Shown here one piece after another: positions 10,016-61,154 of a stretch of DNA of 64,000 bases. How positions within the stretch are numbered: the stretch's first letter is position 1; the number at the start of each line of letters is the position of its first letter. Location: IMG/VR virus record IMGVR_UViG_3300046692_000091, positions 124,001 to 188,000 of that record; one strand, 5' to 3'. A model generated the notes under the pieces. The model was given only the letters and a program-made list of their open reading frames with translations, had not been told where the DNA came from and did not search any database. A program made the translations under genes and the position numbers.

Positions 10016-10017
10016 CT

Positions 10018-15800: not shown

Positions 15801-18451
<2,651 letters not shown>

Positions 18452-26934: not shown

Positions 26935-26942
26935 TATATTAC
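26935..26942 (+). promoter_or_regulatory. Early promoter TATATTAC
   Basis: Context near-identical to promoter at 47089. Confidence 0.8.
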
Positions 26943-26977
26943 TACTGTGAATTCATAAAGACCATTAGGGGCTACAA

Positions 26978-35080: not shown

Positions 35081-35338
35081 ATGCAACAGAATATAATTGT
35101 AGCAGTAAGCTATCCGGTTGTAAGTAAAGACAGCGTAAAGTTTGTTCATTCAATCAACAATGATGAGGGTACGATTACCTTCGTCTCTGTCGATACTCCT
35201 GATAAAGCACAACTTTTTGGTGGCGAAGTAGGGGCGGTTGCAGAGTTCTTAAACTACCATGTTAAACCTAATCTGGAAAATACATGGAAGTTCAATTCTG
35301 TTGACATAAACAAAATCAAACCAGAGGAGGCAGCATGA
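35081..35338 (+). CDS. Hypothetical protein
   Basis: 85 aa, SD ggag. Confidence 0.8.
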   Translation: MQQNIIVAVSYPVVSKDSVKFVHSINNDEGTITFVSVDTPDKAQLFGGEVGAVAEFLNYHVKPNLENTWKFNSVDINKIKPEEAA

Positions 35339-38828: not shown

Positions 38829-39305
38829 GTGACAGATCCAAGACAGCAAGAAATAGATTGCATCGAACTCATGCGTGACCGGTTGATCAAAGAACCACAT
38901 AACTGGCGTGGTACTGTGTTGGAAGAATCCAGTTGGTACAAGCTGCTAGTGGGTGAACTGGATCTTACTGAGTTCACAGTAGCATTTCGCTACTTGCTCA
39001 GTTATTGGGATAAACGTCGACTTAATGTTGGCGGCATCATGAAAATGGAAACCTATATTCGCTTGTGGAATTGCCTATCGGATGACGCTAAACAACAATG
39101 GCCTGATATCGATATCAAGGTGCATCAGTTTGTCGGTCGTCCAGAATGTGCGATCCATGTCCTGCAGGATATAATGCGTGGCCCTACTGACATCAGTACT
39201 TACCTGGATCAATTTCTGCGCGATGATGTCGGTTCTACCTTCCGCTGGGTACAAGGTATCCAAAGAGCAAAAGTAACACGCCAACTCAATAAGGAAGCAG
39301 CATGA
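38829..39305 (+). CDS. Hypothetical protein
   Basis: 158 aa, GTG start. Confidence 0.75.
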   Translation: MTDPRQQEIDCIELMRDRLIKEPHNWRGTVLEESSWYKLLVGELDLTEFTVAFRYLLSYWDKRRLNVGGIMKMETYIRLWNCLSDDAKQQWPDIDIKVHQFVGRPECAIHVLQDIMRGPTDISTYLDQFLRDDVGSTFRWVQGIQRAKVTRQLNKEAA

Positions 39306-39703
39306 GTAATCAACCTGTAACGCGTCGTATTTATAACCTGGTTCGCATCAAAGACAAACAAGGTAAAGCTTACACAGGCTTTGTTGTTGGTCTAGCCGAG
39401 AAGTGTGGTGATAGTGAACTCGATGGTCAAGCATTCTATGCCACCGAAGATCTCAGTGGTTGGACGGATGAACAGTTCGCTTTAGTCAATAAGAAACTGA
39501 AGGCCATCTGGGACTGTGCTGTCGATTATCTCGTATGGGATTGCACTCATGGCGATAATGAGCAATATATTTCCCGCATTTGTCCTGGTGATCTATTGTT
39601 GGTCATTGACGACAAAGTTGTTCCGGTTATCGGGGAACTACGTGAACTCATGTTTGAATATGAGCACTACACAGTTGATGCCCCTCTGGAGAAAGCAGCA
39701 TAA
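39302..39703 (+). CDS. Hypothetical protein
   Basis: 133 aa; RICPGDLLL resembles TIRPGDFLV of 35335. Confidence 0.8.
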   Translation: MSNQPVTRRIYNLVRIKDKQGKAYTGFVVGLAEKCGDSELDGQAFYATEDLSGWTDEQFALVNKKLKAIWDCAVDYLVWDCTHGDNEQYISRICPGDLLLVIDDKVVPVIGELRELMFEYEHYTVDAPLEKAA

Positions 39704-39975
39704 TGGCTAAGGCAGTCCGACATAAAAGTGGTGTGTGGATGCAACCAGGTACAGAAGGCTGGGAAAAGTATCATAACCCACCTGTAATAATGAAAGTACC
39801 TAATGCTCCACTCTCACTCGATCAGTACATGGACGAGCTTGATAAGAAGTGGCGTAAAGCCGAAGGGCGTGTTCCTGTTAAAGAACTGGATGAACGGGGA
39901 CTGATGCTAGAAGGCCGTATTCCATGGGACCCTGTTCGACTGAAACAACTCACCGAAGAACGGTTGGCTGCATGA
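39703..39975 (+). CDS. Hypothetical protein
   Basis: 90 aa, TAATG-coupled. Confidence 0.75.
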   Translation: MAKAVRHKSGVWMQPGTEGWEKYHNPPVIMKVPNAPLSLDQYMDELDKKWRKAEGRVPVKELDERGLMLEGRIPWDPVRLKQLTEERLAA

Positions 39976-48954: not shown

Positions 48955-49099
48955 AGAAGTCTTAGCTAGTGTGGCGGGGGGTGCTTTAGTGCAGTCCCGT
49001 CATCTACCTGAAACCAAACTTGCGCTGGAACCTACCCAACAGACGGATCGATTGGAACTCAAACCAAATCCAGAATATCTGGTGGACGTGTACATATGA
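48917..49099 (+). CDS. Small hypothetical protein
   Basis: SD gagga; 60 aa; coupled to next gene. Confidence 0.55.
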   Translation: MTKELFPENLSFEEVLASVAGGALVQSRHLPETKLALEPTQQTDRLELKPNPEYLVDVYI

Positions 49100-49374
49100 G
49101 CAGCAAACAAATGACCCTGATCCGTGGGGTTATGGTAAACGATCTGTTGGAAATCAATCAACAGGTTCAAGATGGTATCGATAGCCAAGAGTTAGGCTTT
49201 ACCATCGATCAAGCTGTTGCTGTTAAACAAGCAATCCAAGACACTACTGTCGGTGTACTGCATGTGATCGACAAGCATGCGCAAATCTTTCCTGCTGGTC
49301 ATGATCTCGGCTCTAATCCTTTCTTTAATGAATCGGAACTAGCCGAAGCTTACATCGAAGCAATCAACTCTTAA
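49096..49374 (+). CDS. Small acidic helical protein with INS C-terminus
   Basis: Ends YIEAINS. Confidence 0.8.
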   Translation: MSSKQMTLIRGVMVNDLLEINQQVQDGIDSQELGFTIDQAVAVKQAIQDTTVGVLHVIDKHAQIFPAGHDLGSNPFFNESELAEAYIEAINS

Positions 49375-49382
49375 GGAACAAC

Positions 49383-49631
49383 ATGGATACCGAAGAACTC
49401 GTTGAATCTGTTGCAGAGGCTAATGACCTCAAACAAAAAGAAATTCTGGATGGCATGATCGGTATTCGTATCGAAGCAGAAGCTATGCCCCAAGTAGAAG
49501 GCATTCATCACGCTATCTCTGAAACTGCTCGTCTGTATGAAGGCGCATTCGTTCTGGAAGTAACTGCCAATGGTTGTGCTACCGAATACATGGGTACCGC
49601 AGATCGTTACCTGGAGTACGTTAACTCGTGA
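49383..49631 (+). CDS. Small acidic protein with VNS C-terminus
   Basis: Ends YLEYVNS. Confidence 0.8.
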   Translation: MDTEELVESVAEANDLKQKEILDGMIGIRIEAEAMPQVEGIHHAISETARLYEGAFVLEVTANGCATEYMGTADRYLEYVNS

Positions 49632-49864
49632 CCCATCTTGTCCCTGATGAGAAAGTCGATGCTGCTGCAAAGCTATTCATCGACTGGTCACGCAGTGTAG
49701 ATGAAGATGAGTTCGAAGCCACCTTCAAAGGTCTTGATGGTATCCTTGATATTCTAGCTAAGGCGATGATTATCCCATTGGATACTAAAGATCGTCTCAC
49801 TGCTGCGATTGGCCGTATCAATGAAGAAGAGGAAAAGAAAACCTTCGAAGACTTCTTCAAATAA
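49628..49864 (+). CDS. Small acidic helical protein
   Basis: GTGA-coupled; GRINEEEE tail. Confidence 0.75.
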   Translation: MTHLVPDEKVDAAAKLFIDWSRSVDEDEFEATFKGLDGILDILAKAMIIPLDTKDRLTAAIGRINEEEEKKTFEDFFK

Positions 49865-49934
49865 AGAACTACTAATTCCCGTAATACAATGCGTGAATGT
49901 TTCGCGCTAATCATTCTCAATAGGAAGCACCGCA

Positions 49935-50168
49935 ATGACTGACAAAATCGTAGAAGCCAATGTTGAATCCCGTGATGCCCTGATCAGTATTATCAATGAA
50001 GTCCGTAGCACCGCCAATGGCGAAGTCACCATCGCTGCCGCTGTTGATGTTGCAATCACCGGCACCGTAATTGCTGTTGAACAAGCTGTCCTGTCCGGTG
50101 GCATGGGTTCGGTAGTTGACCTGAACGAAGCCCTGGGTAAGAACTGGGCCGAAGCCGTTAACTCCTAA
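49935..50168 (+). CDS. Small acidic protein with VNS C-terminus
   Basis: Ends WAEAVNS. Confidence 0.8.
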   Translation: MTDKIVEANVESRDALISIINEVRSTANGEVTIAAAVDVAITGTVIAVEQAVLSGGMGSVVDLNEALGKNWAEAVNS

Positions 50169-50452
50169 TGGCGCTGTCCCTAATCGACTCAGGGTTGTTC
50201 AAGCTGTTGGACCGTGATCGTGACCAACTGGTGTGCGATGAGTTCAAAGATGCACGTGACGAGGCCGGTAATCTAACCGTCGCCTCCGTCTCTGCAGCTA
50301 TGGATAAACTGTACGACAGAACAGTCGGACAAACGTTGTACGCTTTAGATAGCGTAGGCTTCTTCACGATTGCCGATACTAAAGCTAGAACAATTACAGA
50401 TATCGTTTCTCAGTCAATGGGCGACGAATGGTTCGCTGCAATCAACTCGTAA
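50168..50452 (+). CDS. Small acidic protein with INS C-terminus
   Basis: Ends WFAAINS. Confidence 0.8.
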   Translation: MALSLIDSGLFKLLDRDRDQLVCDEFKDARDEAGNLTVASVSAAMDKLYDRTVGQTLYALDSVGFFTIADTKARTITDIVSQSMGDEWFAAINS

Positions 50453-50461
50453 GGAAATCCG

Positions 50462-50809
50462 ATGTTCCCTGTTTACTTCCAAGGTAGTGTAGTTGGTGCC
50501 ATTCTAGGTATCATCTTGATTCTCTCGTTGGCAACCATTCTGATTCGCAATAAAAGCGAAGGCATGAAGTGGTTCTCCAACAAATACCGCTGGTTGGTGG
50601 CAACCGCTATACTGGTCAGTTGGACTGGTTCGTTCGTCAATATCGGTCTACACCAAGTTGAAGGTGATCGTGCCCGATTCGATCAAGCTGGTACTCTCAC
50701 CGAGAAGAACATTCCTAAGGTTACTCGTGACACTCCTTCACCGGAGTCGGCACGTAAAGCTGCTGACGAATCTCGCAAAGAGATCGACGCCGGTAACCTG
50801 AACAAGTAA
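50462..50809 (+). CDS. Two-TM membrane protein, probable SPFH partner
   Basis: Two hydrophobic helices; directly upstream of SPFH gene. Confidence 0.75.
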   Translation: MFPVYFQGSVVGAILGIILILSLATILIRNKSEGMKWFSNKYRWLVATAILVSWTGSFVNIGLHQVEGDRARFDQAGTLTEKNIPKVTRDTPSPESARKAADESRKEIDAGNLNK

Positions 50810-50851
50810 TACCTGGTTACACTCAAACTCGAATTCAAAAGGAAATGCTAC

Positions 50852-51715
50852 ATGAAACTGCTGTCCGTTATCAAGTCCGCTGCACTCGCCATGATCGCCG
50901 TCGTTGCACTGCAAGGCTGCTCGTTCGAAGTCATCCCACCTGCCTTCAAAGGTAAGATTCTGACTACCTCTGGTTACAACCCAGAGATCCTGGAACCAGG
51001 TAAAGAAACTCTGTGGGGTCGTGATGAACTGGTCCTGCTGGAAACCGGTACTCGCACTGTTGCTGAAACCATCACCGTGAAGATGGATGACAAACTCGAT
51101 CTGACTTTCGATGTTCGTTTCCGTACTCGCATTGGCGGGGACAAGAAAGTCCTGAACCAAATGTTCAATGACATTCAGGTCAAAGAAAAGCGTGTGACAC
51201 TGCAACAAGTCTACGGTGTGTATGGTCTTGATGTAGTGCAATCGGTATCTCGTTCAGTTGTTGGCAAATACAAAACCGAAGATGTCGGTGCTAACTTCGA
51301 TAAGATCACCGCTGATCTGTCTGAACGTCTCGTGAAAGCAATGGTTAATTCCCCCCTGGAAGTATCGAACGTTACTCTTGGTAATCTGAAGTATCCTAAA
51401 GTGATTACTGAAGCGATCGAGAAACAACAAGAGCGTCTGCTGGCTATTGAAACTGAAACCAACCAGCAAGCCATCGAAACAGTTAAACGTGATAACCAAC
51501 TGCGGTTGGCACAACTGGATCGCGATATCGAACTGACCAAAGCCAAGACTCTGCGGGATGCTAACGCCATTACTGCGGATGGTCTGAGCCCGGCACTGCT
51601 GCAATACCGTGCTCTGGACGTACAAGAGAAAATGGCTGAGAATGATGCCGCTGTATTCGTACCATACGAAGCCTTCGGTACCGCTGGCATGTCTAACCGT
51701 ATCTTCAACAAGTAA
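50852..51715 (+). CDS. SPFH/band-7 (prohibitin-like) lipoprotein
   Basis: Lipobox LQGC; IPPAFKG, VTLGNLKYPKVITEAIE, coiled coil, LLQYRAL. Confidence 0.85.
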   Translation: MKLLSVIKSAALAMIAVVALQGCSFEVIPPAFKGKILTTSGYNPEILEPGKETLWGRDELVLLETGTRTVAETITVKMDDKLDLTFDVRFRTRIGGDKKVLNQMFNDIQVKEKRVTLQQVYGVYGLDVVQSVSRSVVGKYKTEDVGANFDKITADLSERLVKAMVNSPLEVSNVTLGNLKYPKVITEAIEKQQERLLAIETETNQQAIETVKRDNQLRLAQLDRDIELTKAKTLRDANAITADGLSPALLQYRALDVQEKMAENDAAVFVPYEAFGTAGMSNRIFNK

Positions 51716-51731
51716 CACTGTCTAACGGACT

Positions 51732-51749
51732 GCCTCCCTTCGGGGAGGC
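51732..51749 (+). terminator. Intrinsic terminator
   Basis: gcctccc-ttcg-gggaggc plus ttt. Confidence 0.85.
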
Positions 51750-51779
51750 TTTCTGTCATTTCTTTTTTGTGAGGTTACG

Positions 51780-52058
51780 ATGACTCAATTCGACGAATCT
51801 TTCCAGGCAATCGAACGAAACATCTCAGGTGGTAGTTACGCCCGGAATAATCCTTGCCCAGTCTCTCAAGCTTTCGCTAATGGCTTGGAAGAAGGAGCAC
51901 GTCATGGTGTACGGGTAACGCTGGATATCCTGGAGCTCCATGGGCATCTAGAAAATGAAGAAGCTGGTAAAGTATCCATCCAGAACCAATGGGATGATTG
52001 GTACCACACCATGCTTGACGAACATGTCGATGTAATTAACGGAGTACCCACAGAATGA
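51780..52058 (+). CDS. Small acidic protein, paralogue of 52925
   Basis: SQAFANGLEEG...GVRVTLDILE versus TQAFRMGIDRGVECVLSAVD. Confidence 0.75.
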   Translation: MTQFDESFQAIERNISGGSYARNNPCPVSQAFANGLEEGARHGVRVTLDILELHGHLENEEAGKVSIQNQWDDWYHTMLDEHVDVINGVPTE

Positions 52059-52312
52059 CCCCTGTACCATCTGATTTCTTTCGTGGTCTAGTAGAACACA
52101 TTGCCCATAACACCAAGCAGCATGATGCGATTGATCTCGCCTTGGTCCATTCTGGAGCAGCAATGACACTGGACTACTTTGCACTGCAGACAATTCGTGC
52201 AGAGCCAGACGGCTCGCATATAAACGCAATGGCTATGTCTGATTGTTTCCGGGAGCATGCCGAACTGTTCTATGCTGATCCTGAACAACAGCAAGCAAAA
52301 AAAGACGCATAG
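52055..52312 (+). CDS. Hypothetical protein
   Basis: 85 aa, coupled. Confidence 0.7.
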   Translation: MTPVPSDFFRGLVEHIAHNTKQHDAIDLALVHSGAAMTLDYFALQTIRAEPDGSHINAMAMSDCFREHAELFYADPEQQQAKKDA

Positions 52313-52349
52313 GCATTCCCTATGTATTAACTCCATTCGGAACACCAAA

Positions 52350-52457
52350 ATGAAACACCGCATCATAGCCTTCTTCTATGAATACCGTAACCCATTGGGG
52401 TTAGCGCTCGTAGGTGGGCTATACATCGCTTTCGTAAATCTCTCTGGCCTCAGTTGA
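52350..52457 (+). CDS. Small single-TM protein (35 aa)
   Basis: MKHRIIAFFYEYRNPLGLALVGGLYIAFV. Confidence 0.5.
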   Translation: MKHRIIAFFYEYRNPLGLALVGGLYIAFVNLSGLS

Positions 52458-52473
52458 CAAAAGGAAAACTGCA

Positions 52474-52932
52474 ATGTCTCCCGCTCTTGTTCTCTCCCTC
52501 GCTGCTATTGTAATCGTTCTACTCGTTGCCTACTATGCGTGGGTTGGTCTTATCAATGCTACCGGTGGTGGCTTGAAAGAGTGGGTAGATGCAGACTTTC
52601 CTGATATCGTGCATACGCCGAAAGCGACATGGTTGACTGGGTTTAAATATCGCCAACATGGCTTGTCTGTTAAAGCTAAATTGGATGTGCCGATCTGTCT
52701 AGAATATGATCAGCATGTACATCTTGGTCGGTTCTCTGTGGTTGACACCTTTGCACGTTCCGCCAGTTCATTAGACGGGGTTGATCAGAACCATGAAAAG
52801 GATCTGGTTGCCTATGACTTTGGTATGGATCTGGAACTCATGACTGGTGGTCAAATCGCTATGCGCGTAGTCTATAACCGCATCAGTATTACCGACATCG
52901 AACCAGTCATCAAGGAGTCTGCCTGTGAGTGA
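52474..52932 (+). CDS. N-terminally anchored membrane protein
   Basis: TM at approximately residues 3-25. Confidence 0.8.
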   Translation: MSPALVLSLAAIVIVLLVAYYAWVGLINATGGGLKEWVDADFPDIVHTPKATWLTGFKYRQHGLSVKAKLDVPICLEYDQHVHLGRFSVVDTFARSASSLDGVDQNHEKDLVAYDFGMDLELMTGGQIAMRVVYNRISITDIEPVIKESACE

Positions 52933-53278
52933 GTACCCAAAGGCAACCAAGGCCGAGCTTGAAAAAGCATATGCCTTGGTTAATGAATTAGAGAAAGAAC
53001 TCGTAGCCGATTCACAAATGGCACGTGGAATTTGGTTTGCTGATATTCAAGCGAACGTCCTAGATCAGAACCCCCCAAAGTTTGACAAAGGGTCAACGAT
53101 GACCCAAGCTTTCCGCATGGGGATTGATCGTGGTGTGGAATGTGTATTGAGCGCAGTCGATTCTCGGGGCATCCTGATGATCGATGGCAATGATCGAATG
53201 CTCAACGTAGACATCACTAGCGATGGTCCGGATATGTTACCCCTGGTAGATCTGTGGACTACCTACATTAATAGCTGA
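52925..53278 (+). CDS. Acidic protein with INS C-terminus
   Basis: GTG start, SD aaggag; ends WTTYINS. Confidence 0.8.
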   Translation: MSEYPKATKAELEKAYALVNELEKELVADSQMARGIWFADIQANVLDQNPPKFDKGSTMTQAFRMGIDRGVECVLSAVDSRGILMIDGNDRMLNVDITSDGPDMLPLVDLWTTYINS

Positions 53279-53285
53279 GGTCTCG

Positions 53286-53621
53286 ATGTATCAAACCACC
53301 AATGATGAACGTTGGGCAAAAGCCACGACTCGTGTTATCACTGATGCTGAGATGAATAATGCCAGTATCCGTATTGGTCAGAACATGATGTTCCAAGGGC
53401 TCAATCAGGACCTTAAGGAATTGAATCAGCTGGTCGATATGGACGAGGATAAAATCAAGTGTGTCCAGCTAGGTATGTGCATGGTTTTCAATTACATTGA
53501 AGACGCTCAGTTAGAACTGATCAGTAAAGAAGATCAGGGTTCACTGAATCCTACTCATGAATCACATGACTATCATCTTGGTTTTGCATGGGATAGTTAC
53601 ATCGCTTCTATTAATAGCTAG
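53286..53621 (+). CDS. Acidic protein with INS C-terminus
   Basis: Ends YIASINS. Confidence 0.8.
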   Translation: MYQTTNDERWAKATTRVITDAEMNNASIRIGQNMMFQGLNQDLKELNQLVDMDEDKIKCVQLGMCMVFNYIEDAQLELISKEDQGSLNPTHESHDYHLGFAWDSYIASINS

Positions 53622-53683
53622 GCTCTGTATGATCTTATGTATCTATGTTTGTAGATATCATCCTGATCACTAAGGAGTCTTAA

Positions 53684-54223
53684 ATGGCTATTCTGAAGAA
53701 AATTGAAGCTGTTGCTGCACGTGTAGCACAGGACATCACCCCACTGGAACTGTTCATCAATGAACACCTGACTACTCAGCGTGTAATTGATTACATCAGC
53801 AATACCCAGATCGATAACCCGTCCATCCGTGTTAACATTGATGGCGCTACCCTGACCACTCCAGCCGTCGCTGCTCTGAAGGCTTCCATTGAAGCTGCAG
53901 AATGGAAAGACGTTGAAGTCATCCAGGAAGCTAAACGTGTAGTCGTTGCTTTCTCGGTTAAACCAAAGGTTGACGTTTACGTCGCCACCGTTAGCCCTGC
54001 TTCTCCATCGGTAGCTGTTGCTGGCACCGTACAACTTGTCGTTACTGTAACTAAGAACGGCGAAGCGTATAGCGCTACTCCTACCTATACCTCTGGTACT
54101 CCAGCTAAAGCCACCGTTGCATCTAACGGTCTGGTTACTGGTGTTGCCGTTGGTACTTCGGTTATCACCATTGCTGAAGCTGGCAAGTACAGCGTCACCA
54201 AGACTGTTACCGTTACTGCTTAA
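53684..54223 (+). CDS. Ig-like (Big_2) domain protein, probable virion decoration protein
   Basis: C-terminal VSPASPSVAVAGTVQL...YTSGTPAKATVASNGLVTGVAVGTSVITI; SD aaggag; TATG cluster upstream. Confidence 0.8.
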   Translation: MAILKKIEAVAARVAQDITPLELFINEHLTTQRVIDYISNTQIDNPSIRVNIDGATLTTPAVAALKASIEAAEWKDVEVIQEAKRVVVAFSVKPKVDVYVATVSPASPSVAVAGTVQLVVTVTKNGEAYSATPTYTSGTPAKATVASNGLVTGVAVGTSVITIAEAGKYSVTKTVTVTA

Positions 54224-54229
54224 TATATC

Positions 54230-54249
54230 GCCTATCCTTCGGGATAGGC
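54230..54249 (+). terminator. Intrinsic terminator
   Basis: gcctatcc-ttcg-ggataggc plus ttt. Confidence 0.85.
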
Positions 54250-54287
54250 TTTATGTTGTTTTCTTTTATTCAAACTTTTTAAACGCC

Positions 54288-54295
54288 TATATTAC
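54288..54295 (+). promoter_or_regulatory. Early promoter TATATTAC
   Basis: Context tttcttttattcaaac shared with promoter at 716. Confidence 0.8.
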
Positions 54296-54329
54296 ATTCT
54301 TGGATTCACTAACTATAGGAAAAGGCCCG

Positions 54330-54713
54330 ATGACTAGTGTAAAGACCGATCGCGAACGCGTAGAAAAACTGTCAATGTTCAGCATAGATCTCACCCAGAA
54401 GATCCGTTCACTAATCGATGTCTTAGGACCATACGCACCTCTGGCACAAGCGTTGTCCGAATACCCTGATGCCTTAATCGTAAAAGCACAAGTAAAATTG
54501 CGTGGCTCAAGTAATAGTCTCTATCAGGTCTCTATCCTAGATAGTGGTCAACTGCAAGAAGTGTTCGTCACCGACAATGACGTATCTCGCTATATTGCAC
54601 TCCGCTTTAACAAAGCGGTATTTGGTACGAGCGACATATTCGATCGTGCCTCAATCTCCGTTGATGGTGTGACTATTGATCCTGAATCTCAGGGTCTAGC
54701 CGACATCGACTGA
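54330..54713 (+). CDS. Hypothetical protein
   Basis: 127 aa after promoter. Confidence 0.75.
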   Translation: MTSVKTDRERVEKLSMFSIDLTQKIRSLIDVLGPYAPLAQALSEYPDALIVKAQVKLRGSSNSLYQVSILDSGQLQEVFVTDNDVSRYIALRFNKAVFGTSDIFDRASISVDGVTIDPESQGLADID

Positions 54714-54718
54714 GAACA

Positions 54719-54736
54719 GTAACCCTTCGGGGTTAC
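54719..54736 (+). terminator. Intrinsic terminator
   Basis: gtaaccc-ttcg-gggttac plus T tract. Confidence 0.85.
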
Positions 54737-54771
54737 ATATTTTTCTTTGTGTGTTTTAAGGAATTTGCAGT

Positions 54772-55206
54772 ATGACAGTTGCACCAGAAATGGTTCCATT
54801 CGTTTATTGCGGTGGTACGTTAGCTGTATTCATCATAGGTACATTACTGTTCTTACTTATCCGCGGCATGATGGATCAGCGTGAGAATGAAAAGCCCGGC
54901 GAAAACAAACGTACTCGTTACATGATGCGTTTCGTTTATGATGCAGTTAACGTTAGGAGAATCGGCTATTACTCTACGAATACGATGAAGCCTTATATAC
55001 AGGCGTATCCAAAGTATGCGGCGGTAATAACTGGTTATCCGGCGGCGAAGTCTGTGTTTGATGACCATGCTAAACTAAGCCTTGGTCAAGTCAAAGAACA
55101 ATTTGCTTATCTGTACCCTACGTGCCGAATCTATCTAATGGAAGAACGCACTTACTTCGGTATTAAATCCTGGTATGACCTAACGAGCGTGGATCTGGTC
55201 CCATGA
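54772..55206 (+). CDS. N-terminally anchored membrane protein
   Basis: TM at approximately residues 9-30. Confidence 0.75.
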   Translation: MTVAPEMVPFVYCGGTLAVFIIGTLLFLLIRGMMDQRENEKPGENKRTRYMMRFVYDAVNVRRIGYYSTNTMKPYIQAYPKYAAVITGYPAAKSVFDDHAKLSLGQVKEQFAYLYPTCRIYLMEERTYFGIKSWYDLTSVDLVP

Positions 55207-55499
55207 GTGAATATGTAATCGAAATCATCCGTGGTCGTGATCACATTTATCTGTCTCGTAAAGAGAGCGGTAAAGCCAATGTCACACCGCAAGAACGCAA
55301 CGCTATTACTTTTGAATCATCAACTGCAGCTAAGCTAGTGATTGATGCATTGATGGAAAAGCCCACCTCAGACATGCGTAAGCTGTTGAAGGTTCAAGAA
55401 GACTGGAATCGTCCAGTCCAACTGTTGGCCCGTAAGCGGTTGGGTAATAGTCACATGACTACCAACGCCCGTATGTATCTATTTAAGGAAGCCGCATAA
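55203..55499 (+). CDS. Hypothetical protein
   Basis: 98 aa, coupled. Confidence 0.75.
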   Translation: MSEYVIEIIRGRDHIYLSRKESGKANVTPQERNAITFESSTAAKLVIDALMEKPTSDMRKLLKVQEDWNRPVQLLARKRLGNSHMTTNARMYLFKEAA

Positions 55500-55636
55500 T
55501 GTGGAAATTTACTTCGTTTGATGGACTCGTTTGGCGCACCCCTAAACAAATGAATCTGGTCGCCGCTGTCGCTCAGTGGACAATTTCCACTGGTCTTGGC
55601 GAAGCAGATATCAAAGAAATCATTAACATCCACTAA
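55499..55636 (+). CDS. Small hypothetical protein (45 aa)
   Basis: TAATG-coupled; MWKFTSFDGLVWRTPKQ... Confidence 0.6.
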   Translation: MWKFTSFDGLVWRTPKQMNLVAAVAQWTISTGLGEADIKEIINIH

Positions 55637-55648
55637 AAGGAATTAGTC

Positions 55649-56332
55649 ATGATCGAGATTAAAGTTAAGCCACAACATGGTAAAGGTCCTGGTATCAACA
55701 TTCACGGTAAACACGTGACTGAATCGGTACACCAGATCTTCTCTCGTGTAATGCGTGCTAATCACATGGACAGTCCTTACTACAAGGCCCGTCAAAAGTG
55801 TTCTGCATTCTTCCAAGGTGGGCATGATGCACCGAAAGGTGAATGGCTATTCATCGAGTTCTGGGGTAGTGATTACCTGGACTTCGTACAGATCATCCGT
55901 AAGCTAGTTAACTATCTCGATAATGAGGGTAATCCGCTACCGATTACCTACAGCTTCCCTGAAGAACAACGGGAGCGTGCGGATAACATCCATCACGATA
56001 CATTGCGTGGTAAGTATCAGAACAATGCTGACGGCACGAAGACACTGTTCCCTGTAGATGGGGATGATGTAATCGATCTGATCTGGCACATCGAACACGA
56101 AGGCTTCGTAATCCATCGTACAGAGATCCATGTTGATCCTTACGAGTGGGAAGAGAAAGGTGCGCTGGGTGTATTCCAGATGATCACTGAGGACACTACT
56201 GTTCCTTACATCTGGTTGCTCGGTGAGAACCTACGCTTCCTACCGACCGACGAAGAACAGAAACGGGCTGTCATGGATCTGTTGGGAGAATTCAAAATCG
56301 CCTACACGTTGAAGAAATATCCGAATGTCTAA
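55649..56332 (+). CDS. Hypothetical protein
   Basis: 227 aa, SD aagga. Confidence 0.85.
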   Translation: MIEIKVKPQHGKGPGINIHGKHVTESVHQIFSRVMRANHMDSPYYKARQKCSAFFQGGHDAPKGEWLFIEFWGSDYLDFVQIIRKLVNYLDNEGNPLPITYSFPEEQRERADNIHHDTLRGKYQNNADGTKTLFPVDGDDVIDLIWHIEHEGFVIHRTEIHVDPYEWEEKGALGVFQMITEDTTVPYIWLLGENLRFLPTDEEQKRAVMDLLGEFKIAYTLKKYPNV

Positions 56333-56627
56333 ATCTTTGACATGGGAACTCGAATGGATTGATAACAATCCAGATCGATACGAAGGCCCTTGGCATCAGG
56401 CAGCGGTGAAACGGTTCATCACTGCCCGCTATCTACGGAATGCGCTGATCAAAAAGGATGTGTCCTATACAGGTGATCCTGAGAAGCGTTACAAGTACTT
56501 GGGAACTTCCAAAGGGGCGGGCACTAGTAAAGGAGAGATCCTAGAAGTTTACTGGTGCTTCGTTGACAACCAACTGTATCACCGTACTCCCGGTGATTTC
56601 CGTGATCGAATTCAGGATAGCCGATGA
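56325..56627 (+). CDS. DUF1653-like SH3-fold protein
   Basis: YKYLG...EVYW...LYHRTPGDF pattern. Confidence 0.45.
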   Translation: MSKSLTWELEWIDNNPDRYEGPWHQAAVKRFITARYLRNALIKKDVSYTGDPEKRYKYLGTSKGAGTSKGEILEVYWCFVDNQLYHRTPGDFRDRIQDSR

Positions 56628-56848
56628 GAGAACTTGCTGATGGCGTGTATGACACGTGTCCACTACATGGACCGAAAGTCTACATGCCTGACCGTTTAGT
56701 GCGCGTCACTGACAACTGTGTATCGTTTGTGATTGATGACATTGTTATACCCGATCCCAAACCGAGTGGCTTTCCATTCCGTTTCTCCGTTGCTGACTTT
56801 TTCAGCGTAAACGTACTCTTTAACAAAGAAAAGAATAAGGTTGCATAA
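56624..56848 (+). CDS. Hypothetical protein
   Basis: 74 aa, coupled. Confidence 0.65.
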   Translation: MRELADGVYDTCPLHGPKVYMPDRLVRVTDNCVSFVIDDIVIPDPKPSGFPFRFSVADFFSVNVLFNKEKNKVA

Positions 56849-56850
56849 GA

Positions 56851-57558
56851 ATGACTAATTGCGTTATCTACACCGACACCCCTTCTCGCGACGTGGTTCC
56901 TTATCGTGTCTACCTGCAAGAAGCTGGTTCGATGGGTATGGCAGATTGGTATCAAGGTACCATGGGAAAGCTGAATACGTTGGACTCCCGTTGCTTGGTA
57001 TTCCCTAATGCAAAAGAAGCTGAGGATTTTGCTCGGATCTTTGCTAATATACATAGTCGGTTTGGTGGTTGCCAGACCGTTGGTTATCATGGTGTTACTG
57101 AAAACGGTAACGCCTGTCCCCCATTCAAGATCGTTAAACATGGTGATCAAGAAATGGGCTGGACTCCTGAAAAACATGAGGCCTGGCTTAAGCGTAATGC
57201 GGCTTGGAATGAAATGCTTATACCGGCACTGATTAGTCGTGACAGCGTAACTGTTGCACGTGAGGGTGATGTCACCCCAGAAGAACTGCTTAACCGTATT
57301 ACCTACCTGACTAATAACCTGGTAGAAGAAGAACTCGATGAAGTTCTTGGTAACATCCAGAACATGGAACGCTTGGAATTCAAGTGCACCGATATCGATA
57401 CATATCCTGAATCCGTAACGATTCATTATACTCGTAAACTTCCAGCCTTCGAACCCTACCATTGCTCGATGACCGTTTGCTCGTTGAATCTCTATGATGA
57501 CAAAGGCATCAAGCAGTTGAAAGATCTGGCTGCACGTCGAGAACTTGCGGATGCGTGA
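56851..57558 (+). CDS. Hypothetical protein
   Basis: 235 aa. Confidence 0.8.
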   Translation: MTNCVIYTDTPSRDVVPYRVYLQEAGSMGMADWYQGTMGKLNTLDSRCLVFPNAKEAEDFARIFANIHSRFGGCQTVGYHGVTENGNACPPFKIVKHGDQEMGWTPEKHEAWLKRNAAWNEMLIPALISRDSVTVAREGDVTPEELLNRITYLTNNLVEEELDEVLGNIQNMERLEFKCTDIDTYPESVTIHYTRKLPAFEPYHCSMTVCSLNLYDDKGIKQLKDLAARRELADA

Positions 57559-57991
57559 ACAAACCGATATGCGTCGGTACAGTGTGTCGCAGCAATACAA
57601 GTTCTATGAGCTCGACAAAGATACCACGATGGCTAATATCGCCTTAGGCTTGACCTGTTCATACAGCGACATGCTTCTGGTCTTCCCGGATGATCTATCC
57701 TGGGATACTTGCCAGTACGATGGTTTCGGTGGCTACGGTATATTCGAAGTTTCAGTATGCGTGAAGAATGACTCATACTGGAACAAGCAAGGCCCATTCA
57801 TATACCGTGGTGCACATGTCGTTTTCTTTGGCGGTTCTATCGAAAAGATCCAGGCACAAGCAGAGAAATGGTTTCTCACTAACCGGGATCTGAAGAACGA
57901 ACTATATACTCATCGCTATGGTCGTAAAGTTACGCCGGTGCTTTTATCACTACGTTGCTACGAACCATATGTACCCAAGATAAAAGAGTAG
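57551..57991 (+). CDS. Hypothetical protein
   Basis: 146 aa, overlapping start. Confidence 0.75.
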   Translation: MREQTDMRRYSVSQQYKFYELDKDTTMANIALGLTCSYSDMLLVFPDDLSWDTCQYDGFGGYGIFEVSVCVKNDSYWNKQGPFIYRGAHVVFFGGSIEKIQAQAEKWFLTNRDLKNELYTHRYGRKVTPVLLSLRCYEPYVPKIKE

Positions 57992-57996
57992 AAAAG

Positions 57997-58278
57997 ATGA
58001 GCGTTAAGTTGATCAAGCGTGACAATGTGTGGGTTACTGAATTCTTAGGGAAAGAGCGGCACTTCATCATTGATACTGATTTGGTGACTTGGCGCTCACT
58101 CGGTGTACACCCATCTGGTGCAGTCGAGTTCCAGATTGATCTGGATGGTAGTTTGGAAAACGTACGCAGTATTTTTACTGGAGAAGACATTACGGAATTG
58201 GACATTCCTCGTGGCCATTCAGTTGCTGGAATGATTAAAGCAACAAAACCGTACGTACATAGGGGGAATCATGTTTGA
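57997..58278 (+). CDS. Hypothetical protein
   Basis: 93 aa. Confidence 0.7.
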   Translation: MSVKLIKRDNVWVTEFLGKERHFIIDTDLVTWRSLGVHPSGAVEFQIDLDGSLENVRSIFTGEDITELDIPRGHSVAGMIKATKPYVHRGNHV

Positions 58279-58681
58279 TGTAACTGCAATAAATCTGGTC
58301 TTACTTTTCCTGGTGATCGCTGGTCTGATTTGGTGGTTGATCCGCTGGGTAGCGAAACCGGTAGCTATGCTTCAGTTCACCGGTGTAGAACTGATCACGC
58401 AATACGGCACACAACGCGTTATAGAGCATTCTAAGCTGCGTTCGGATGATGGTGATAAACCACTAGTCTCTGGACTGAATGACTTCTATATCACCGTTCA
58501 GGATGGTGTATTACGGTACCATAACCCTGGCGAAGCTCATCTACTTAACCCAATCCTACGAAGCTCTGAGGAGATCCTATTCTTCAGACTGCAAATTCGT
58601 GTGGTCGGTGAACGAATTGTAAAGTTCGAGCAGACCAATCTTTCCAAACCGAACGCTACATTGCTGTGGAGCAAAGCGTAA
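58271..58681 (+). CDS. N-terminally anchored membrane protein
   Basis: SD ggggga; TM at approximately residues 6-25. Confidence 0.8.
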   Translation: MFDVTAINLVLLFLVIAGLIWWLIRWVAKPVAMLQFTGVELITQYGTQRVIEHSKLRSDDGDKPLVSGLNDFYITVQDGVLRYHNPGEAHLLNPILRSSEEILFFRLQIRVVGERIVKFEQTNLSKPNATLLWSKA

Positions 58682-58692
58682 GGAGGTAAACC

Positions 58693-58827
58693 ATGCTATA
58701 TAGCGAAGTTGGTTTCCTTACAAGTATCCTAGTGGTACTCGGTATTATGGTATCTTCAACTCTCCTAAGGAATACAAATGTCAGAGTCACTCAATGCTGG
58801 TCAGTTCCCCGTACTACATCGCAGTAG
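58693..58827 (+). CDS. Possible small TM peptide (44 aa)
   Basis: Very strong SD aaggaggt; overlaps next gene by 50 nt. Confidence 0.4.
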   Translation: MLYSEVGFLTSILVVLGIMVSSTLLRNTNVRVTQCWSVPRTTSQ

Positions 58828-59239
58828 TAATGGTGCGCTCTTCGTGCAGCATCAACAATCTTTGCCTCAGCGAGTAACCTTGCCTAGCGGTGATGTTGTT
58901 GAAACTGGTTTCGTAAAAGTCACTGGCGTCGATGCCATTGATCTGTATGCCCTGTGCCAAAACAATGGCCGTAGTAAATCCCTGTCGATTAAAGCGATCG
59001 TTTATATTGACGAAGGCGATAACTTGAAGGTGCATGATGTTAAACGTATGGCTCCGGCTTTACTGAGCGATCCAGCTTATGTCACTAAAGGCAAAGCTAA
59101 AATCGAGATCGGCCATGTAACTAAACTGTGTGGATTGCGCTGGGGTTTCAATCTCCAGCTTGACCCTGCAACCGGTAAGTGTACCATCGAAGTGGACCGG
59201 GAATCCCCGATCGTTGGTTTGAAGTTGCAGTTCGATTAA
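58778..59239 (+). CDS. Hypothetical protein
   Basis: 153 aa, SD aagga. Confidence 0.8.
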   Translation: MSESLNAGQFPVLHRSSNGALFVQHQQSLPQRVTLPSGDVVETGFVKVTGVDAIDLYALCQNNGRSKSLSIKAIVYIDEGDNLKVHDVKRMAPALLSDPAYVTKGKAKIEIGHVTKLCGLRWGFNLQLDPATGKCTIEVDRESPIVGLKLQFD

Positions 59240-59241
59240 AC

Positions 59242-59261
59242 GGGGTCCCTTCGGGGACTCC
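59242..59261 (+). terminator. Intrinsic terminator
   Basis: ggggtccc-ttcg-gggactcc plus ttt. Confidence 0.85.
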
Positions 59262-59286
59262 TTTATGTTGCAAAAAATTATAACCC

Positions 59287-59294
59287 TATATTAC
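59287..59294 (+). promoter_or_regulatory. Early promoter TATATTAC
   Basis: Exact motif after terminator. Confidence 0.8.
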
Positions 59295-59358
59295 CATTTG
59301 GTGTAGGGAAATCGTATCCATGACCAATCCTGGTGTTTGACTAGTAAGGCAACAAAGA

Positions 59359-59643
59359 ATGCTAAGCTCGCTCTTCAATCTGACCATCCGTAGTCTCGCA
59401 GCATCCAAAGTAGAACCAGGTATGGTATTAACCGCAGCACGAGATATATTCGTGACCATTCTCGATAGACGTGGGGCACACCACGATATCTTGTTTGCGA
59501 ACGAAGGGGATCAGGTCCGAGTTGAAGGATCTGATAGTCACCGTCCTGGTGATTTGTTCGTATGCTCCAACGTCGACAACTTTGATGAAGTCGGCTCAGT
59601 AAATCCACATGACCTCGAAGACGCCTTTAATGAGTACAAATAA
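59359..59643 (+). CDS. Small beta-barrel (SH3-like) protein
   Basis: LTAARDI...LFANEGDQVRV; family with 59938 and 61162. Confidence 0.7.
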   Translation: MLSSLFNLTIRSLAASKVEPGMVLTAARDIFVTILDRRGAHHDILFANEGDQVRVEGSDSHRPGDLFVCSNVDNFDEVGSVNPHDLEDAFNEYK

Positions 59644-59984
59644 TGCAATTTGATAATCTCTACGAATACATCGACCAAACTTACGATGTTCAGCTCGATA
59701 AAGCGTTCCTTAAAAAAGAAGCTCCGTCGCTGACATACCTGAAACTGGTCCGAGTTCTTTCGGTGTTAAAGATTGATCCGACTGGTCAATCGGCAGAAGC
59801 TTTGTTCGCCGATGCTGTCCGTCAGGAACGCAGCGCGTTCACACCACATCAATACAGCCTCGTGCAGAACCTACTCACGCTGGCCGATCTCCATGAGATC
59901 ATTGAAACCCTTATTCGCAAATCAGGAAAGAAAACAAATGCTCCTTTCGACAACGGTCAGTTCGCCGACGATATTAATAGCTAA
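59643..59984 (+). CDS. Helical protein with INS C-terminus
   Basis: TAATG-coupled; ends FADDINS. Confidence 0.75.
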   Translation: MQFDNLYEYIDQTYDVQLDKAFLKKEAPSLTYLKLVRVLSVLKIDPTGQSAEALFADAVRQERSAFTPHQYSLVQNLLTLADLHEIIETLIRKSGKKTNAPFDNGQFADDINS

Positions 59985-60539: not shown

Positions 60540-61154
60540 ATGTTAGGGTATACCCAAATGCATCACCGGACTGGTATTGAAGAACTCCGTCTAGCGGCTG
60601 TTGAAAATATCCGGGAAACACTAGGGGATGCTCGTTGGGAGTTCATGGTTACTGAACGTGATCCTGACGTACCTGCAGTACTCACCACCATCGGCAATAA
60701 CCGCTATGGGGCACCTGATCTGATTCTGGGTTGTGGCATGACTGATAAAGGTCTGGGTCATCTTCGTATGTCCTATGGCGATCTGTTTGCTTACTTGGAA
60801 TGGCACAAAGACTTTACCTCGGGCGAAGTTGATCTGGTTGACTACTATACGTTCCTGCTGAAAGAACGTGGTCATGCCAAGATTGTTCCAATCAAACCCT
60901 CCGGTCGTATCCATCTGCTTCACGTAGATGCTGAACGCTGGTTAGCTGGTCAAGGTTGGCAACATGCTCAGTACTACAATGCAGATGAGCGTAAAAATGC
61001 ACGCTTCCTGCAACTCGTACTGAGCGATGACGATGGTCGGTTACCATGGGACGAAGGTTACAACTACGTCCGACAGCATATCCTGGAATCCAAACCATTC
61101 GGTGTTAAGCCAGTTGATGCTCCTGTATCTGCCCGTGCCCATTATTTGAACTGA
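60540..61154 (+). CDS. DUF4262-like protein
   Basis: GDARWEFMV...LTTIGNNRYGAPDLILGCG...LQLVLSDDDGRLPWDEGY. Confidence 0.65.
   Translation: MLGYTQMHHRTGIEELRLAAVENIRETLGDARWEFMVTERDPDVPAVLTTIGNNRYGAPDLILGCGMTDKGLGHLRMSYGDLFAYLEWHKDFTSGEVDLVDYYTFLLKERGHAKIVPIKPSGRIHLLHVDAERWLAGQGWQHAQYYNADERKNARFLQLVLSDDDGRLPWDEGYNYVRQHILESKPFGVKPVDAPVSARAHYLN

What the first reader, a model, noticed from the sequence alone, without database searches (positions are those of the whole stretch)
49096..59984. Seven small proteins share a C-terminal [WYF]-x-x-x-[IV]-N-S-COOH motif
Seen: YIEAINS (49374), YLEYVNS (49631), WAEAVNS (50168), WFAAINS (50452), WTTYINS (53278), YIASINS (53621), FADDINS (59984). All have an aromatic residue exactly 7 from the end and stop right after Ser. 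Ser uses both TCN and AGC codons and all three stop codons occur, so selection is on the protein, not the DNA. The bodies are highly diverged acidic helical proteins. Several share a weak core (AIQDTTVGVLHVID, LYDRTVGQTLYALD, GIDRGVECVLSAVD), also seen in 51780, which lacks the tail. Six of the seven flank the membrane-protein/SPFH pair. I do not recognise this motif from any described family. Inference: a C-terminal docking or sorting signal read by one receptor (phage scaffold, SPFH complex, protease or host target), letting a variable set of effectors plug into a shared machine.
Basis: partly seen in the sequence, partly recalled or inferred. Interest (0 to 1): 0.88.

Follow-up and report, generated by a model that had tools for sequence, protein, structure and literature searches.

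The report
Jumbo-phage protein family with INS tail
Seven small acidic proteins of a Pseudomonas jumbo phage end in the same few amino acids because most are diverged copies of one uncharacterised gene family, and the fixed free end probably works as a docking helix whose partner is unknown.

Summary
Seven + strand ORFs end in [WYF]xxx[IV]NS-stop, against 0.004 expected per gene set. An eighth match at 26958 lies in no ORF and fits chance. Selection acts on the protein: Asn uses AAC and AAT, Ser uses TCN and AGY, Thr variants occur, and all three stops occur. Every ortholog in about ten related 300-kb Pseudomonas jumbo phages keeps the tail, including Psa21, D6, two distant metagenomic phages and Noxifer. 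The scanned parts of phiKZ have none.

The bodies are mostly related, not independent. With tails removed, profiles of each group still find other tail-bearing groups first: A-B-C-D and F-G-I. They share a hairpin with a core helix, a linker and a C-terminal amphipathic helix. Common descent therefore explains most of the recurrence. Group H shows no body similarity.

No Pfam, PHROG, NCBIfam or PDB relative exists. The link to SPFH is positional only.

What remains unusual is that Ile-Asn are the only invariant columns across the family, and the chain almost always stops one residue later. I read the tail as a docking helix that needs a free end. It may dock on the family's own core or on an unknown shared partner. 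Function is untested.

The parts
49096..49374 (+). Group A member, 92 aa, pI 4.3, ends YIEAINS
   Evidence: Orthologs in 7 distinct genomes all keep the tail. AF2 predicts H3-29, H37-62, a disordered linker at 67-78 and a tail helix at 79-91, with mean pLDDT 66.
49383..49631 (+). Group B member, 82 aa, ends YLEYVNS
   Evidence: The tail-trimmed profile hits groups A and C first.
49628..49864 (+). Group X, 78 aa, no tail. Possible tail-less relative (weak).
   Evidence: Its tail-trimmed profile hits F first, E 0.07-0.1. hhalign X-F gives 25% probability.
49935..50168 (+). Group C member, 77 aa, ends WAEAVNS. It corresponds to only the C-terminal module of a 203-225 aa protein in relatives.
   Evidence: the window protein aligns to residues 127-203 of the L004 ortholog and 131-208 of the D6 ortholog.
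50168..50452 (+). Group D member, 94 aa, ends WFAAINS
   Evidence: L004 carries an extra paralog (9060-9317, ending EWAEAINS) hit at E = 2e-7 with the tail removed.
50462..51715 (+). Context, not a family member. A 115-aa two-TM protein (50462-50809) and a 287-aa SPFH/Band_7 protein with a lipoprotein-type signal (50852-51715), followed by a terminator at 51732.
   Evidence: Band_7 at 3e-13 and phrog_200 'lipoprotein' at 8.5e-48. TM and signal features. Terminator.
51780..52058 (+). Group E, 92 aa, with a degenerate tail: HVDVING plus VPTE
   Evidence: The L004 ortholog ends HVDVING-stop. In the window the chain runs 4 codons further into an ATGA overlap. E orthologs in other phages end differently. 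Body links to the family are weak.
52055..52312 (+). Group Y, 85 aa, no tail. Likely a tail-less relative of group G.
   Evidence: hhalign Y-G gives 78% probability, E = 1.8e-5. hmmsearch Y to Psa21 G gives E = 0.002.
52474..52932 (+). 152-aa protein with an N-terminal TM segment. Its end overlaps the start of F in every genome examined. Candidate partner of F.
   Evidence: The same overlap is seen in distant L023 (9547-10008 and 10001-10348).
52925..53278 (+). Group F member, 117 aa, ends WTTYINS. The best-conserved group.
   Evidence: AF2 gives pLDDT 82 and pTM 0.66, with H9-46, H59-81, short strands and a tail helix at 107-116. The BFVD model of the Psa21 ortholog matches at TM 0.91. Distant homologs keep the tail.
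53286..53621 (+). Group G member, 111 aa, ends YIASINS
   Evidence: With tails trimmed, G hits F at E = 5e-5 to 5e-4.
59643..59984 (+). Group H member, 113 aa, ends FADDINS after a variable Gly/Lys/Ser-rich linker. No detectable body similarity to the other groups.
   Evidence: No cross hits with tails trimmed.
26938..26958 (+). Stray YITTVNS-stop that lies in no ORF. Chance match, not part of the family.

Best explanation
Most of these genes are members of one lineage-specific multigene family of small, acidic, soluble proteins. The family is found in Psa21-like and Noxifer-like Pseudomonas jumbo phages, a group treated in the literature as nucleus-forming. It arose by tandem duplication and divergence.

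Each member has four parts: a helical hairpin; a second helix carrying the family core (A-[FY]-x-x-G-h-x-x-G-h-x-x-x-h-x-x-[IL]-[DE] in the F cluster); a Gly/Pro-rich or strand-containing linker; and a short C-terminal amphipathic helix. That helix puts a hydrophobic stripe at -11, -7 and -3 and ends in Asn-Ser/Thr with a free carboxylate.

Shown: the tail recurs mainly by common descent, and it is held by strong purifying selection on the protein.

Inferred: the tail is a docking helix whose aromatic/Ile face and free end insert into a conserved groove. The most likely groove is the family's own conserved small-residue core helix. Docking in cis would close a three-helix unit. Docking in trans would link copies or paralogs. 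The divergent surfaces would then give each paralog its own target, as expected for host-takeover or anti-defence genes in an accessory block of small genes.
For: Paralogy:
- Tail-trimmed profiles searched against tail-trimmed ORF sets recover other tail groups as top hits in each of six genomes (9-13 of 16; p = 2e-5 to 3e-9).
- The strongest links are F-I at 2e-5, F-G at 5e-5, A-B at 9e-4 and C-B at 2e-3. The best hit in the phiKZ control is 0.02.
- Foldseek links the F model to Psa21 group I at probability 1.0 and TM 0.58-0.65, and more weakly to Noxifer proteins of 89 and 99 aa. Those lengths match gp239 and gp256, which end in VNS and INT.
- Two codon lineages exist for the tail: ATC AAC TCN and ATT AAT AGY.

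Protein-level selection:
- Asn is invariant in 47 of 47 sequences despite AAC/AAT turnover. Ser switches between TCN and AGY, with ACN (Thr) variants. All three stop codons are used.
- Key positions are 0.81-1.00 identical within groups, against 0.63-0.82 for the bodies.
- Ile(-3) and Asn(-2) are the only invariant columns in a 15-sequence alignment at 14-47% identity.

Shared architecture: AF2 gives helix, helix, linker, terminal helix for both F and A.

Cis packing: the F tail helix has pLDDT of about 87, and an independent BFVD model agrees over the full length (TM 0.91, rmsd 1.7). The core helix carries invariant Gly66 and Gly70 in F.

Need for a free end: more than 60 sequences from several phage lineages stop right after Ser/Thr. 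In the three exceptions the last residue is also replaced: ING+VPTE, IND+ETN and INL.
Against: - No coordinates were available, so burial of Trp and Ile and the contacts of the carboxylate were not measured.
- In group A the tail helix has low confidence (pLDDT about 50), sits behind a disordered linker, and differs from the BFVD model of its ortholog (TM 0.58, rmsd 9.8). That fits a tethered peptide waiting for a partner as well as it fits cis packing.
- Group H has the tail behind a low-complexity linker on a body with no detectable similarity. That looks like a portable linear motif.
- Simple cis packing does not obviously require the exact chain end.
- The alignments are shallow (3-10 sequences per group), and individual cross-group E-values are marginal.
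Confidence: 0.5

Rival explanations
1. The tail is a true C-terminal docking or sorting signal read by one external receptor, either a phage or a host protein. Candidates are a membrane complex, a nucleus-shell or early-vesicle component, or a hub protein. On this view the family is a set of adaptors or effectors plugged into one machine.
For: - The chain end is fixed in more than 60 sequences, and Asn-Ser/Thr is invariant beyond what a helix cap needs.
- The tail is tethered by flexible linkers in A and H.
- H, and possibly PSA21_251 (ending EIANINS), carry it on bodies with no detectable similarity.
- One face of the helix is universal (-7, -3, -2, -1), while positions -6 to -4 are group-specific.
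- The window copy of C keeps only the tail-bearing module.
Against: - No receptor candidate emerged.
- SPFH fails on distribution and on topology.
- The BCS1-like AAA ATPase is far more widespread than the family, with 173 phage records.
- The F tail helix is confidently packed in two independent models.
- Published work on nucleus-forming phages reports import through surface residues, not terminal signals (PMC12908238).
Confidence: 0.32
2. The tail is a C-terminal degron that times the turnover of these proteins through a host or phage AAA+ protease or unfoldase.
For: A free C-terminus is what such machines commonly read (established knowledge of ssrA/ClpXP and FtsH). The genome encodes an AAA+ ATPase at 28432-29814.
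Against: The ending is polar (Asn-Ser), unlike the non-polar known degrons. The AAA protein is BCS1-like and no protease domain was found. Its distribution does not track the family. A degron would not need the upstream amphipathic pattern.
Confidence: 0.07
3. The motif is a by-product of a DNA- or RNA-level signal at gene ends, such as a ribosome-binding site, a start/stop overlap, a promoter or a terminator.
For: This does happen in the same window. Ten genes end in K/E-x-A-A because AAGGA plus an ATGA overlap serves the next gene.
Against: For the INS tails the codons differ (ATC/ATT/GTN; AAC/AAT; TCN/AGY/ACN) and the downstream contexts differ (RBS, ATGA overlap, promoter-like 20-mer, terminator). 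The Shine-Dalgarno sequence usually lies after the stop codon (TAAGGA).
Confidence: 0.01

Closest known systems
Lineage-specific expansions of small proteins in jumbo phages (for example the roughly 35-copy zinc-ribbon expansion of Bacillus phage G; PMC7824862)
   Same: Tandem, fast-diverging paralogs of small proteins in accessory regions of giant phage genomes, with only a short signature conserved.
   Different: The signature here is an extreme C-terminal helix with a fixed chain end, not a metal-binding or known fold. No family model exists in Pfam, PHROGs or NCBIfam.
C-terminal hub-docking tails, such as the bacterial SSB C-terminal tip and the sliding-clamp-binding C-terminal tails of phage T4 and bacterial polymerases (from established knowledge, not tested here)
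   Same: A short acidic-then-hydrophobic peptide at the very C-terminus, often behind a flexible linker. Its free end inserts into a pocket, so many proteins can use one partner.
   Different: The sequence pattern differs: the ending is polar (Asn-Ser/Thr) rather than hydrophobic. No hub has been identified. Most carriers are paralogs rather than unrelated proteins.
Terminal tripeptide sorting signals of eukaryotes (PTS1 -SKL, ER -KDEL; from established knowledge)
   Same: An invariant last few residues whose function depends on being at the free C-terminus.
   Different: Nothing comparable is described for phages or bacteria. In nucleus-forming phages, import is reported to use surface residues, not terminal signals (PMC12908238). 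No localisation data exist for this family.
NfeD-SPFH operon partners
   Same: Small genes lie next to an SPFH/Band_7 gene together with a small membrane protein.
   Different: There is no NfeD match. The tail proteins are soluble. The SPFH pair and the family occur independently of each other.

Membership tests
Any curated protein family (Pfam-A, PHROGs v4, NCBIfam) | A profile match above the curated or significant threshold | tested here: not met
   All seven proteins plus 51780: no Pfam hit better than E = 0.049, no PHROG hit better than 0.05, and NCBIfam hits far below cut-off.
Any solved structure | Sequence or fold similarity to a PDB chain | tested here: not met
   An hmmsearch with the F profile against PDB sequences gave 0 hits at E <= 10. 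Foldseek of the F model against PDB gave a best E of 2.0.
ssrA-like or FtsH-type C-terminal degrons | Non-polar last residues (for example -LAA) | tested here: not met
   The last two residues are Asn-Ser/Thr in more than 60 sequences.
ssrA-like or FtsH-type C-terminal degrons | Tail-dependent proteolysis | not testable with these tools
   Needs half-life measurements.
PDZ-binding C-terminal motifs | A hydrophobic residue at the last position | tested here: not met
   The last residue is Ser or Thr.
NfeD partners of SPFH proteins | An NfeD domain or membrane anchoring, plus obligatory pairing with an SPFH gene | tested here: not met
   No NfeD hit and no TM segment in any tail protein. SPFH occurs without the family in L011 and L013. 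The family occurs with no Band_7 on record in L023.
Acb2/Tad1-type hairpin anti-defence sponges | Significant fold match to the hairpin domain | tested here: not met
   Only one BFVD hit, at E = 3.6, for the low-confidence A model.
Type II antitoxins with a C-terminal toxin-binding helix | An N-terminal DNA-binding fold (RHH, HTH or AbrB) and an adjacent toxin gene | tested here: inconclusive
   No Pfam match to antitoxin or toxin families among the tail proteins, 51780, the 115-aa membrane protein or SPFH. Most other flanking genes were not scanned. Neighbours are mostly other family members or membrane proteins. Fold-level similarity cannot be excluded.
The family proposed here (INS-tail family) | Core helix, linker, and a C-terminal [WFYH]xxx[IV]N[ST]-COOH | tested here: met
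   Met by A, B, C, D, F and G. H meets only the tail criterion. E, X and Y meet only weak body criteria.

The most novel reading that the evidence does not exclude
The [WFY]xxx[IV]N[ST]-COOH helix is a genuine terminal address tag. One phage or host receptor would read its free end and thereby recruit a diversifying set of small proteins to a single site, for example a membrane complex, the early infection vesicle or the nucleus shell. That would be the first terminal sorting or docking signal described in nucleus-forming jumbo phages, where import is currently thought not to use terminal signals.
Probability: 0.27. Interest if true: 0.85.

Novelty: new variant of a known kind. Interest (0 to 1): 0.55.

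Why it matters
Accessory blocks of small ORFan genes make up much of a jumbo-phage genome and are almost entirely unexplained. This work groups at least nine such genes per genome into one family with a simple, testable handle. The handle is a fixed C-terminal helix that can be extended, truncated or point-mutated without touching the body.

If the tail docks on a shared partner, it identifies a hub of the infection cycle in Psa21-like phages. It would also give a portable tag for recruiting cargo to that hub. These phages are of interest as biocontrol agents against Pseudomonas syringae.

If the tail only closes or links the family's own fold, the family is still a clean case of a paralog array that diversifies its surfaces around a minimal conserved scaffold. 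That pattern is typical of host-takeover and anti-defence genes.

Tried and rejected
- Chance: rejected.
- DNA-level origin (RBS, overlap or promoter): rejected from codon and context diversity. The KEAA endings in the same window show what such an artefact looks like.
- Known families: Pfam, PHROGs and NCBIfam gave nothing, as did PDB by sequence and by fold.
- The long forms of group C and the odd members of L022 and L023 have no Pfam domain.
- Weak tblastn hits of H in Pseudomonas phage EL (E = 7) span two annotated genes and are chance.
- P0011, a 1724-aa hit of the F profile, is a repeat protein full of HTH_48 units that adds up weak matches. It is spurious.
- SPFH as receptor: rejected on distribution and topology.
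- BCS1-like AAA ATPase as a co-occurring reader: not supported, since it is present in 173 phage records.
- phiKZ (1-50 kb and 230-280 kb) has no tail-bearing ORF and no coherent profile hits, so phiKZ functional data cannot be transferred.
- tblastn of the distant member P0012 against the phage collection found nothing.
- hhalign on the shallow group alignments gave only weak pairwise links. The enrichment test on top hits was more informative.
- Literature searches found no description of this motif or family.


Full report
1. THE OBSERVATION

From the window's amino-acid composition, the chance of this ending is 3.4e-5 per gene. That gives 0.004 expected among 121 called genes, and P(>=7) = 4e-21. 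The called proteins contain no internal copy of the motif, against 0.7 expected.

In six-frame translations of Markov-1 random sequences, motif-plus-stop occurs 0.18 times per window. The real window has eight. The eighth, ending at 26958, is not in an ORF of 20 aa or more. It is the one occurrence that chance allows.

2. WHERE THE WINDOW COMES FROM

The window is part of IMG/VR contig 3300046692_000091, which is 314.8 kb (locus L003, 100% identity).

The nearest isolates are Pseudomonas phages D6, Psa21 (genus Tepukevirus) and RVTF4, each about 305 kb.

The Psa21 record annotates PhuZ and split RNA-polymerase subunits, and its gene order follows phiKZ. A Psa21 homolog of a nucleus-shell-associated protein has been studied (PMC10643120). 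These are therefore chimallivirus-type, nucleus-forming jumbo phages.

3. SELECTION ACTS ON THE PROTEIN

I sorted 47 non-identical tail-bearing sequences from nine related genomes into eight ortholog groups. Groups A, B, C, D, F, G and H are in the window. Group I is absent from the window and sits just after SPFH in Psa21, L004 and L005.

Codon usage across these 47 sequences:
- Position -2 is always Asn, coded 32 times by AAC and 15 times by AAT.
- Position -3 is Ile or Val, using seven different codons.
- Position -1 is Ser by TCN (28), Ser by AGY (16) or Thr by ACN (3).
- The stop is TAA (30), TGA (13) or TAG (4).

What follows the stop also differs between genes. It may be a TAAGGA ribosome-binding site, an ATGA overlap, a conserved promoter-like 20-mer or a hairpin terminator.

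The same window holds a useful contrast. Ten genes end in K/E-x-A-A because AAG GAA GCN GCA TGA carries the Shine-Dalgarno sequence and overlapping start of the next gene. The INS tail shows no such DNA constancy.

Within ortholog groups the four key positions (-7, -3, -2, -1) are 0.81-1.00 identical, against 0.63-0.82 for the bodies.

The group-weighted profile extends the motif to [LMA]-A-[DE]-x-[WFYH]-[AIV]-x-x-[IV]-N-[ST]. This places hydrophobic residues at -11, -7 and -3, as in an amphipathic helix.

4. DISTRIBUTION

In the complete Psa21 genome, scanned piece by piece, all nine full matches lie in 12 kb of 305 kb (258,991-270,714). 'INS' is the commonest three-residue ending among 1338 ORFs. 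Two further genes elsewhere end in INS:
- PSA21_276 carries the family core and a one-residue shift of the Trp.
- PSA21_251 has no detectable body similarity.

Group F has few relatives in the large databases: six clusters among 5.8 billion proteins and six real representatives among 1.84 billion. All of them keep the tail, down to a very diverged member (21% identity to F in the alignment).

The genomic contexts of the two most distant F homologs are other jumbo phages:
- L022, a 310-kb contig, has eight tail genes on both sides of a membrane+SPFH pair.
- L023 has two canonical tails plus two variants...INDETN and ...INL.

Noxifer belongs to another genus and infects P. fluorescens. It has two members, gp256 (...FEEINT) and gp239 (...FGSVNS). 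Foldseek hits of matching length (89 and 99 aa) and the tail regex point to them, and tail-trimmed profiles support this.

phiKZ has none in the 100 kb scanned, which includes the region corresponding by position to the Psa21 cluster.

5. THE BODIES ARE RELATED

BLAST finds no cross-group hits, and pairwise hhalign on shallow alignments is weak: F-G 53%, Y-G 78%.

The decisive test removed the last eight residues from both the profiles and the target ORFs. The best non-self hits of each group profile were still other tail-bearing proteins. Two clusters appear:
- A, B, C and D hit each other.
- F, I and G hit each other.
- The tail-less neighbours X and Y attach to F and G.

Repeated in six genomes separately, 9-13 of the 16 top-two hits were tail-bearing, against a 12-15% background (p = 2e-5 to 3e-9).

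The phiKZ control shows that single E-values around 0.02-0.3 can arise by chance in such small sets. The weight therefore lies on the enrichment and on the stronger links: F-I 2e-5, F-G 5e-5, A-B 9e-4, C-B 2e-3.

Structure agrees with this:
- AF2 of F (9 sequences, pLDDT 82, pTM 0.66) gives a long helix 9-46, the core helix 59-81, short strands and the tail helix 107-116.
- The independent BFVD model of the Psa21 F ortholog matches at TM 0.91. Psa21 group I is the next hit, at probability 1.0 and TM 0.58-0.65.
- AF2 of A (6 sequences, pLDDT 66) gives the same order of elements: helix 3-29, helix 37-62, a disordered linker and the tail helix 79-91.

A 15-sequence alignment of the F cluster at 14-47% identity shows the shared core helix, A-[FY]-x-x-G-h-x-x-G-V-x-x-V-x-x-x-I-D, and a short [IL]-N strand. 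Only two columns are invariant, Ile(-3) and Asn(-2).

Group H is the exception. It gives no cross hits, and its tail follows a variable Gly/Lys/Ser-rich linker.

6. CONTEXT

All family members are soluble and acidic, with pI 4.1-5.0. They sit among small membrane proteins.

Hairpin terminators at 51732, 54230, 54719 and 59242 divide the block into transcription units.

The start of F overlaps the end of a 152-aa protein with an N-terminal TM segment. This holds in every genome examined, including L023, which suggests the two act as a pair.

The SPFH gene is Band_7 and phrog_200 'lipoprotein', and it begins with a lipoprotein-like signal. The same membrane+SPFH pair occurs in two other phages (L011, L013; 60% identity) with no tail family. 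L023 has the family with no Band_7 gene on record within 10 kb. SPFH is therefore a neighbour, not a demonstrated partner.

The AAA protein that Psa21 labels FtsH is BCS1_N+AAA in the window (28432-29814). It occurs in 173 phage records, as already noted in PMC7824862. It does not track the family.

7. WHAT IT MOST LIKELY IS AND HOW IT WORKS

Shown:
- This is a lineage-specific family of tandem paralogs.
- The tail is its most conserved element and is under protein-level purifying selection.
- The chain end is fixed.

Inferred: the tail is a docking helix. Two readings fit the data.

(a) It docks on the family's own conserved core helix. In cis this would close a three-helix unit. In trans it would link copies. 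In favour: the only two conserved elements are the core helix, which has invariant small residues (Gly66 and Gly70 in F), and the tail, which has a bulky aromatic. The F tail is also confidently placed in two independent models.

(b) It docks on an external shared partner. In favour:
- the fixed free end;
- Asn-Ser/Thr conserved beyond what a helix cap needs;
- flexible linkers in A and H;
- H, and possibly PSA21_251, carrying the tail on bodies that show no similarity;
- one universal face and one group-specific face on the helix.

In all three cases where the chain does not end in N-S/T, the last residue is also replaced (ING+VPTE in the window's E, IND+ETN and INL in L023). This fits either reading and suggests those copies have lost tail function.

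I put (a) at about 0.5, (b) at about 0.3 and a degron at under 0.1. The tools gave no model coordinates and no complex prediction, so I could not separate (a) from (b).

8. COMPARISON WITH WHAT IS KNOWN

No curated family, solved structure or paper describes this family or motif.

In principle it resembles C-terminal hub-docking tails, such as the SSB tip and clamp-binding tails. It also resembles terminal tripeptide signals. It meets none of their sequence definitions, because the ending is polar.

As a genomic phenomenon it is one more lineage-specific expansion of small proteins in a jumbo phage (PMC7824862).

A review of nucleus-forming phages states that nuclear import uses surface residues rather than a terminal signal sequence (PMC12908238). 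A terminal signal in this group would be new, but nothing here shows that the tail directs localisation.

9. VERDICT

The motif is real and protein-level. However, most carriers are paralogs, so shared descent explains most of the recurrence, and the link to SPFH is positional only.

The fixed Ile-Asn-Ser/Thr free end remains an unexplained and easily testable feature.

Novelty: a new variant of a known kind, namely an uncharacterised paralog family with an unusual terminal signature.

Interest: 0.55.

Noticed in passing
window 23203-23637, 24997-25461, 28432-29814, 29816-30157, 31102-32916, 35081-35338, 38829-39305, 39302-39703, 39703-39975, 55203-55499: Ten + strand genes end in -A-A, most of them in K/E-E-A-A. 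In most of these the DNA reads AAG GAA GCN GCA followed by TGA or TAA. That sequence carries the Shine-Dalgarno (AAGGA) and, where the stop is TGA, the overlapping ATG of the next gene. It is a C-terminal 'motif' created by translational coupling rather than by selection on the protein.
   Followed up: yes
window 28432-29814: A 460-aa BCS1_N + AAA ATPase, annotated as FtsH / cell division protein in Psa21 and D6. No protease domain was found. Homologs occur in 173 phage records, mostly jumbo phages. Its role in phages is only speculated in the literature (PMC7824862).
   Followed up: partly
window 53629-53645 (and after the F or G stop in L001, L004, L005, L006, L010, L012): A conserved motif of about 20 nt, (G)TGTGATCTTATGTATCTA, lies directly after the stop of whichever tail gene comes last and about 40 nt before the Ig-like (Big_2) gene at 53684-54223. 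It is a candidate phage promoter containing TATG. It occurs only once in the window.
   Followed up: partly
window 51732-51749, 54230-54249, 54719-54736, 59242-59261: GC-rich hairpins with TTCG tetraloops act as likely terminators. Those at 54230 and 59242 are followed by TTTATGTTG, and the one at 51732 by TTTCTGTCAT. They split the block into transcription units.
   Followed up: no
window 49935-50168 versus L004 8449-9060, L001 4711-5337, L005 8662-9339: Group C is a 203-225 aa protein in most relatives. The window and Psa21 keep only the C-terminal module of 77-93 aa with the tail. The N-terminal 130 aa of the long form has no Pfam match.
   Followed up: partly
window 52474-52932 / 52925-53278; L023 9547-10008 / 10001-10348: A 152-aa protein with an N-terminal TM segment always overlaps the start of the group F gene, even in the most distant genome. 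This suggests a conserved, translationally coupled pair.
   Followed up: partly
window 51780-52058; L004 11264-11542: Group E ends HVDVING-stop in the closest relative. In the window it runs four codons further (VPTE) into an ATGA overlap. E orthologs in other phages have a different C-terminal half ending ...RSERE. This may be a decayed or recombined tail.
   Followed up: partly
window 50852-51715: The SPFH/Band_7 protein begins with a lipoprotein-like signal peptide (…VALQGC) and matches phrog_200 'lipoprotein'. A phage-encoded, probably extracytoplasmic SPFH protein paired with a two-TM protein is conserved even in phages only 60% identical (L011, L013).
   Followed up: partly
L024 (Noxifer) 5306-5605 and 16335-16604; L018 (Psa21) 27501-27845 and 12287-12709: Family members, or INS-ended proteins, occur outside the main cluster and in another phage genus. 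Noxifer gp256 and gp239 have Phe at -6, not -7. PSA21_276 carries the core with Trp at -8. PSA21_251 ends EIANINS on an unrelated 140-aa body.
   Followed up: partly
window 60540-61154: A 204-aa DUF4262 protein, just above Pfam's threshold (28.6 bits against 28). DUF4262 is also on record, as a weak hit, for a similarly placed 201-aa gene in L022. Function unknown.
   Followed up: no
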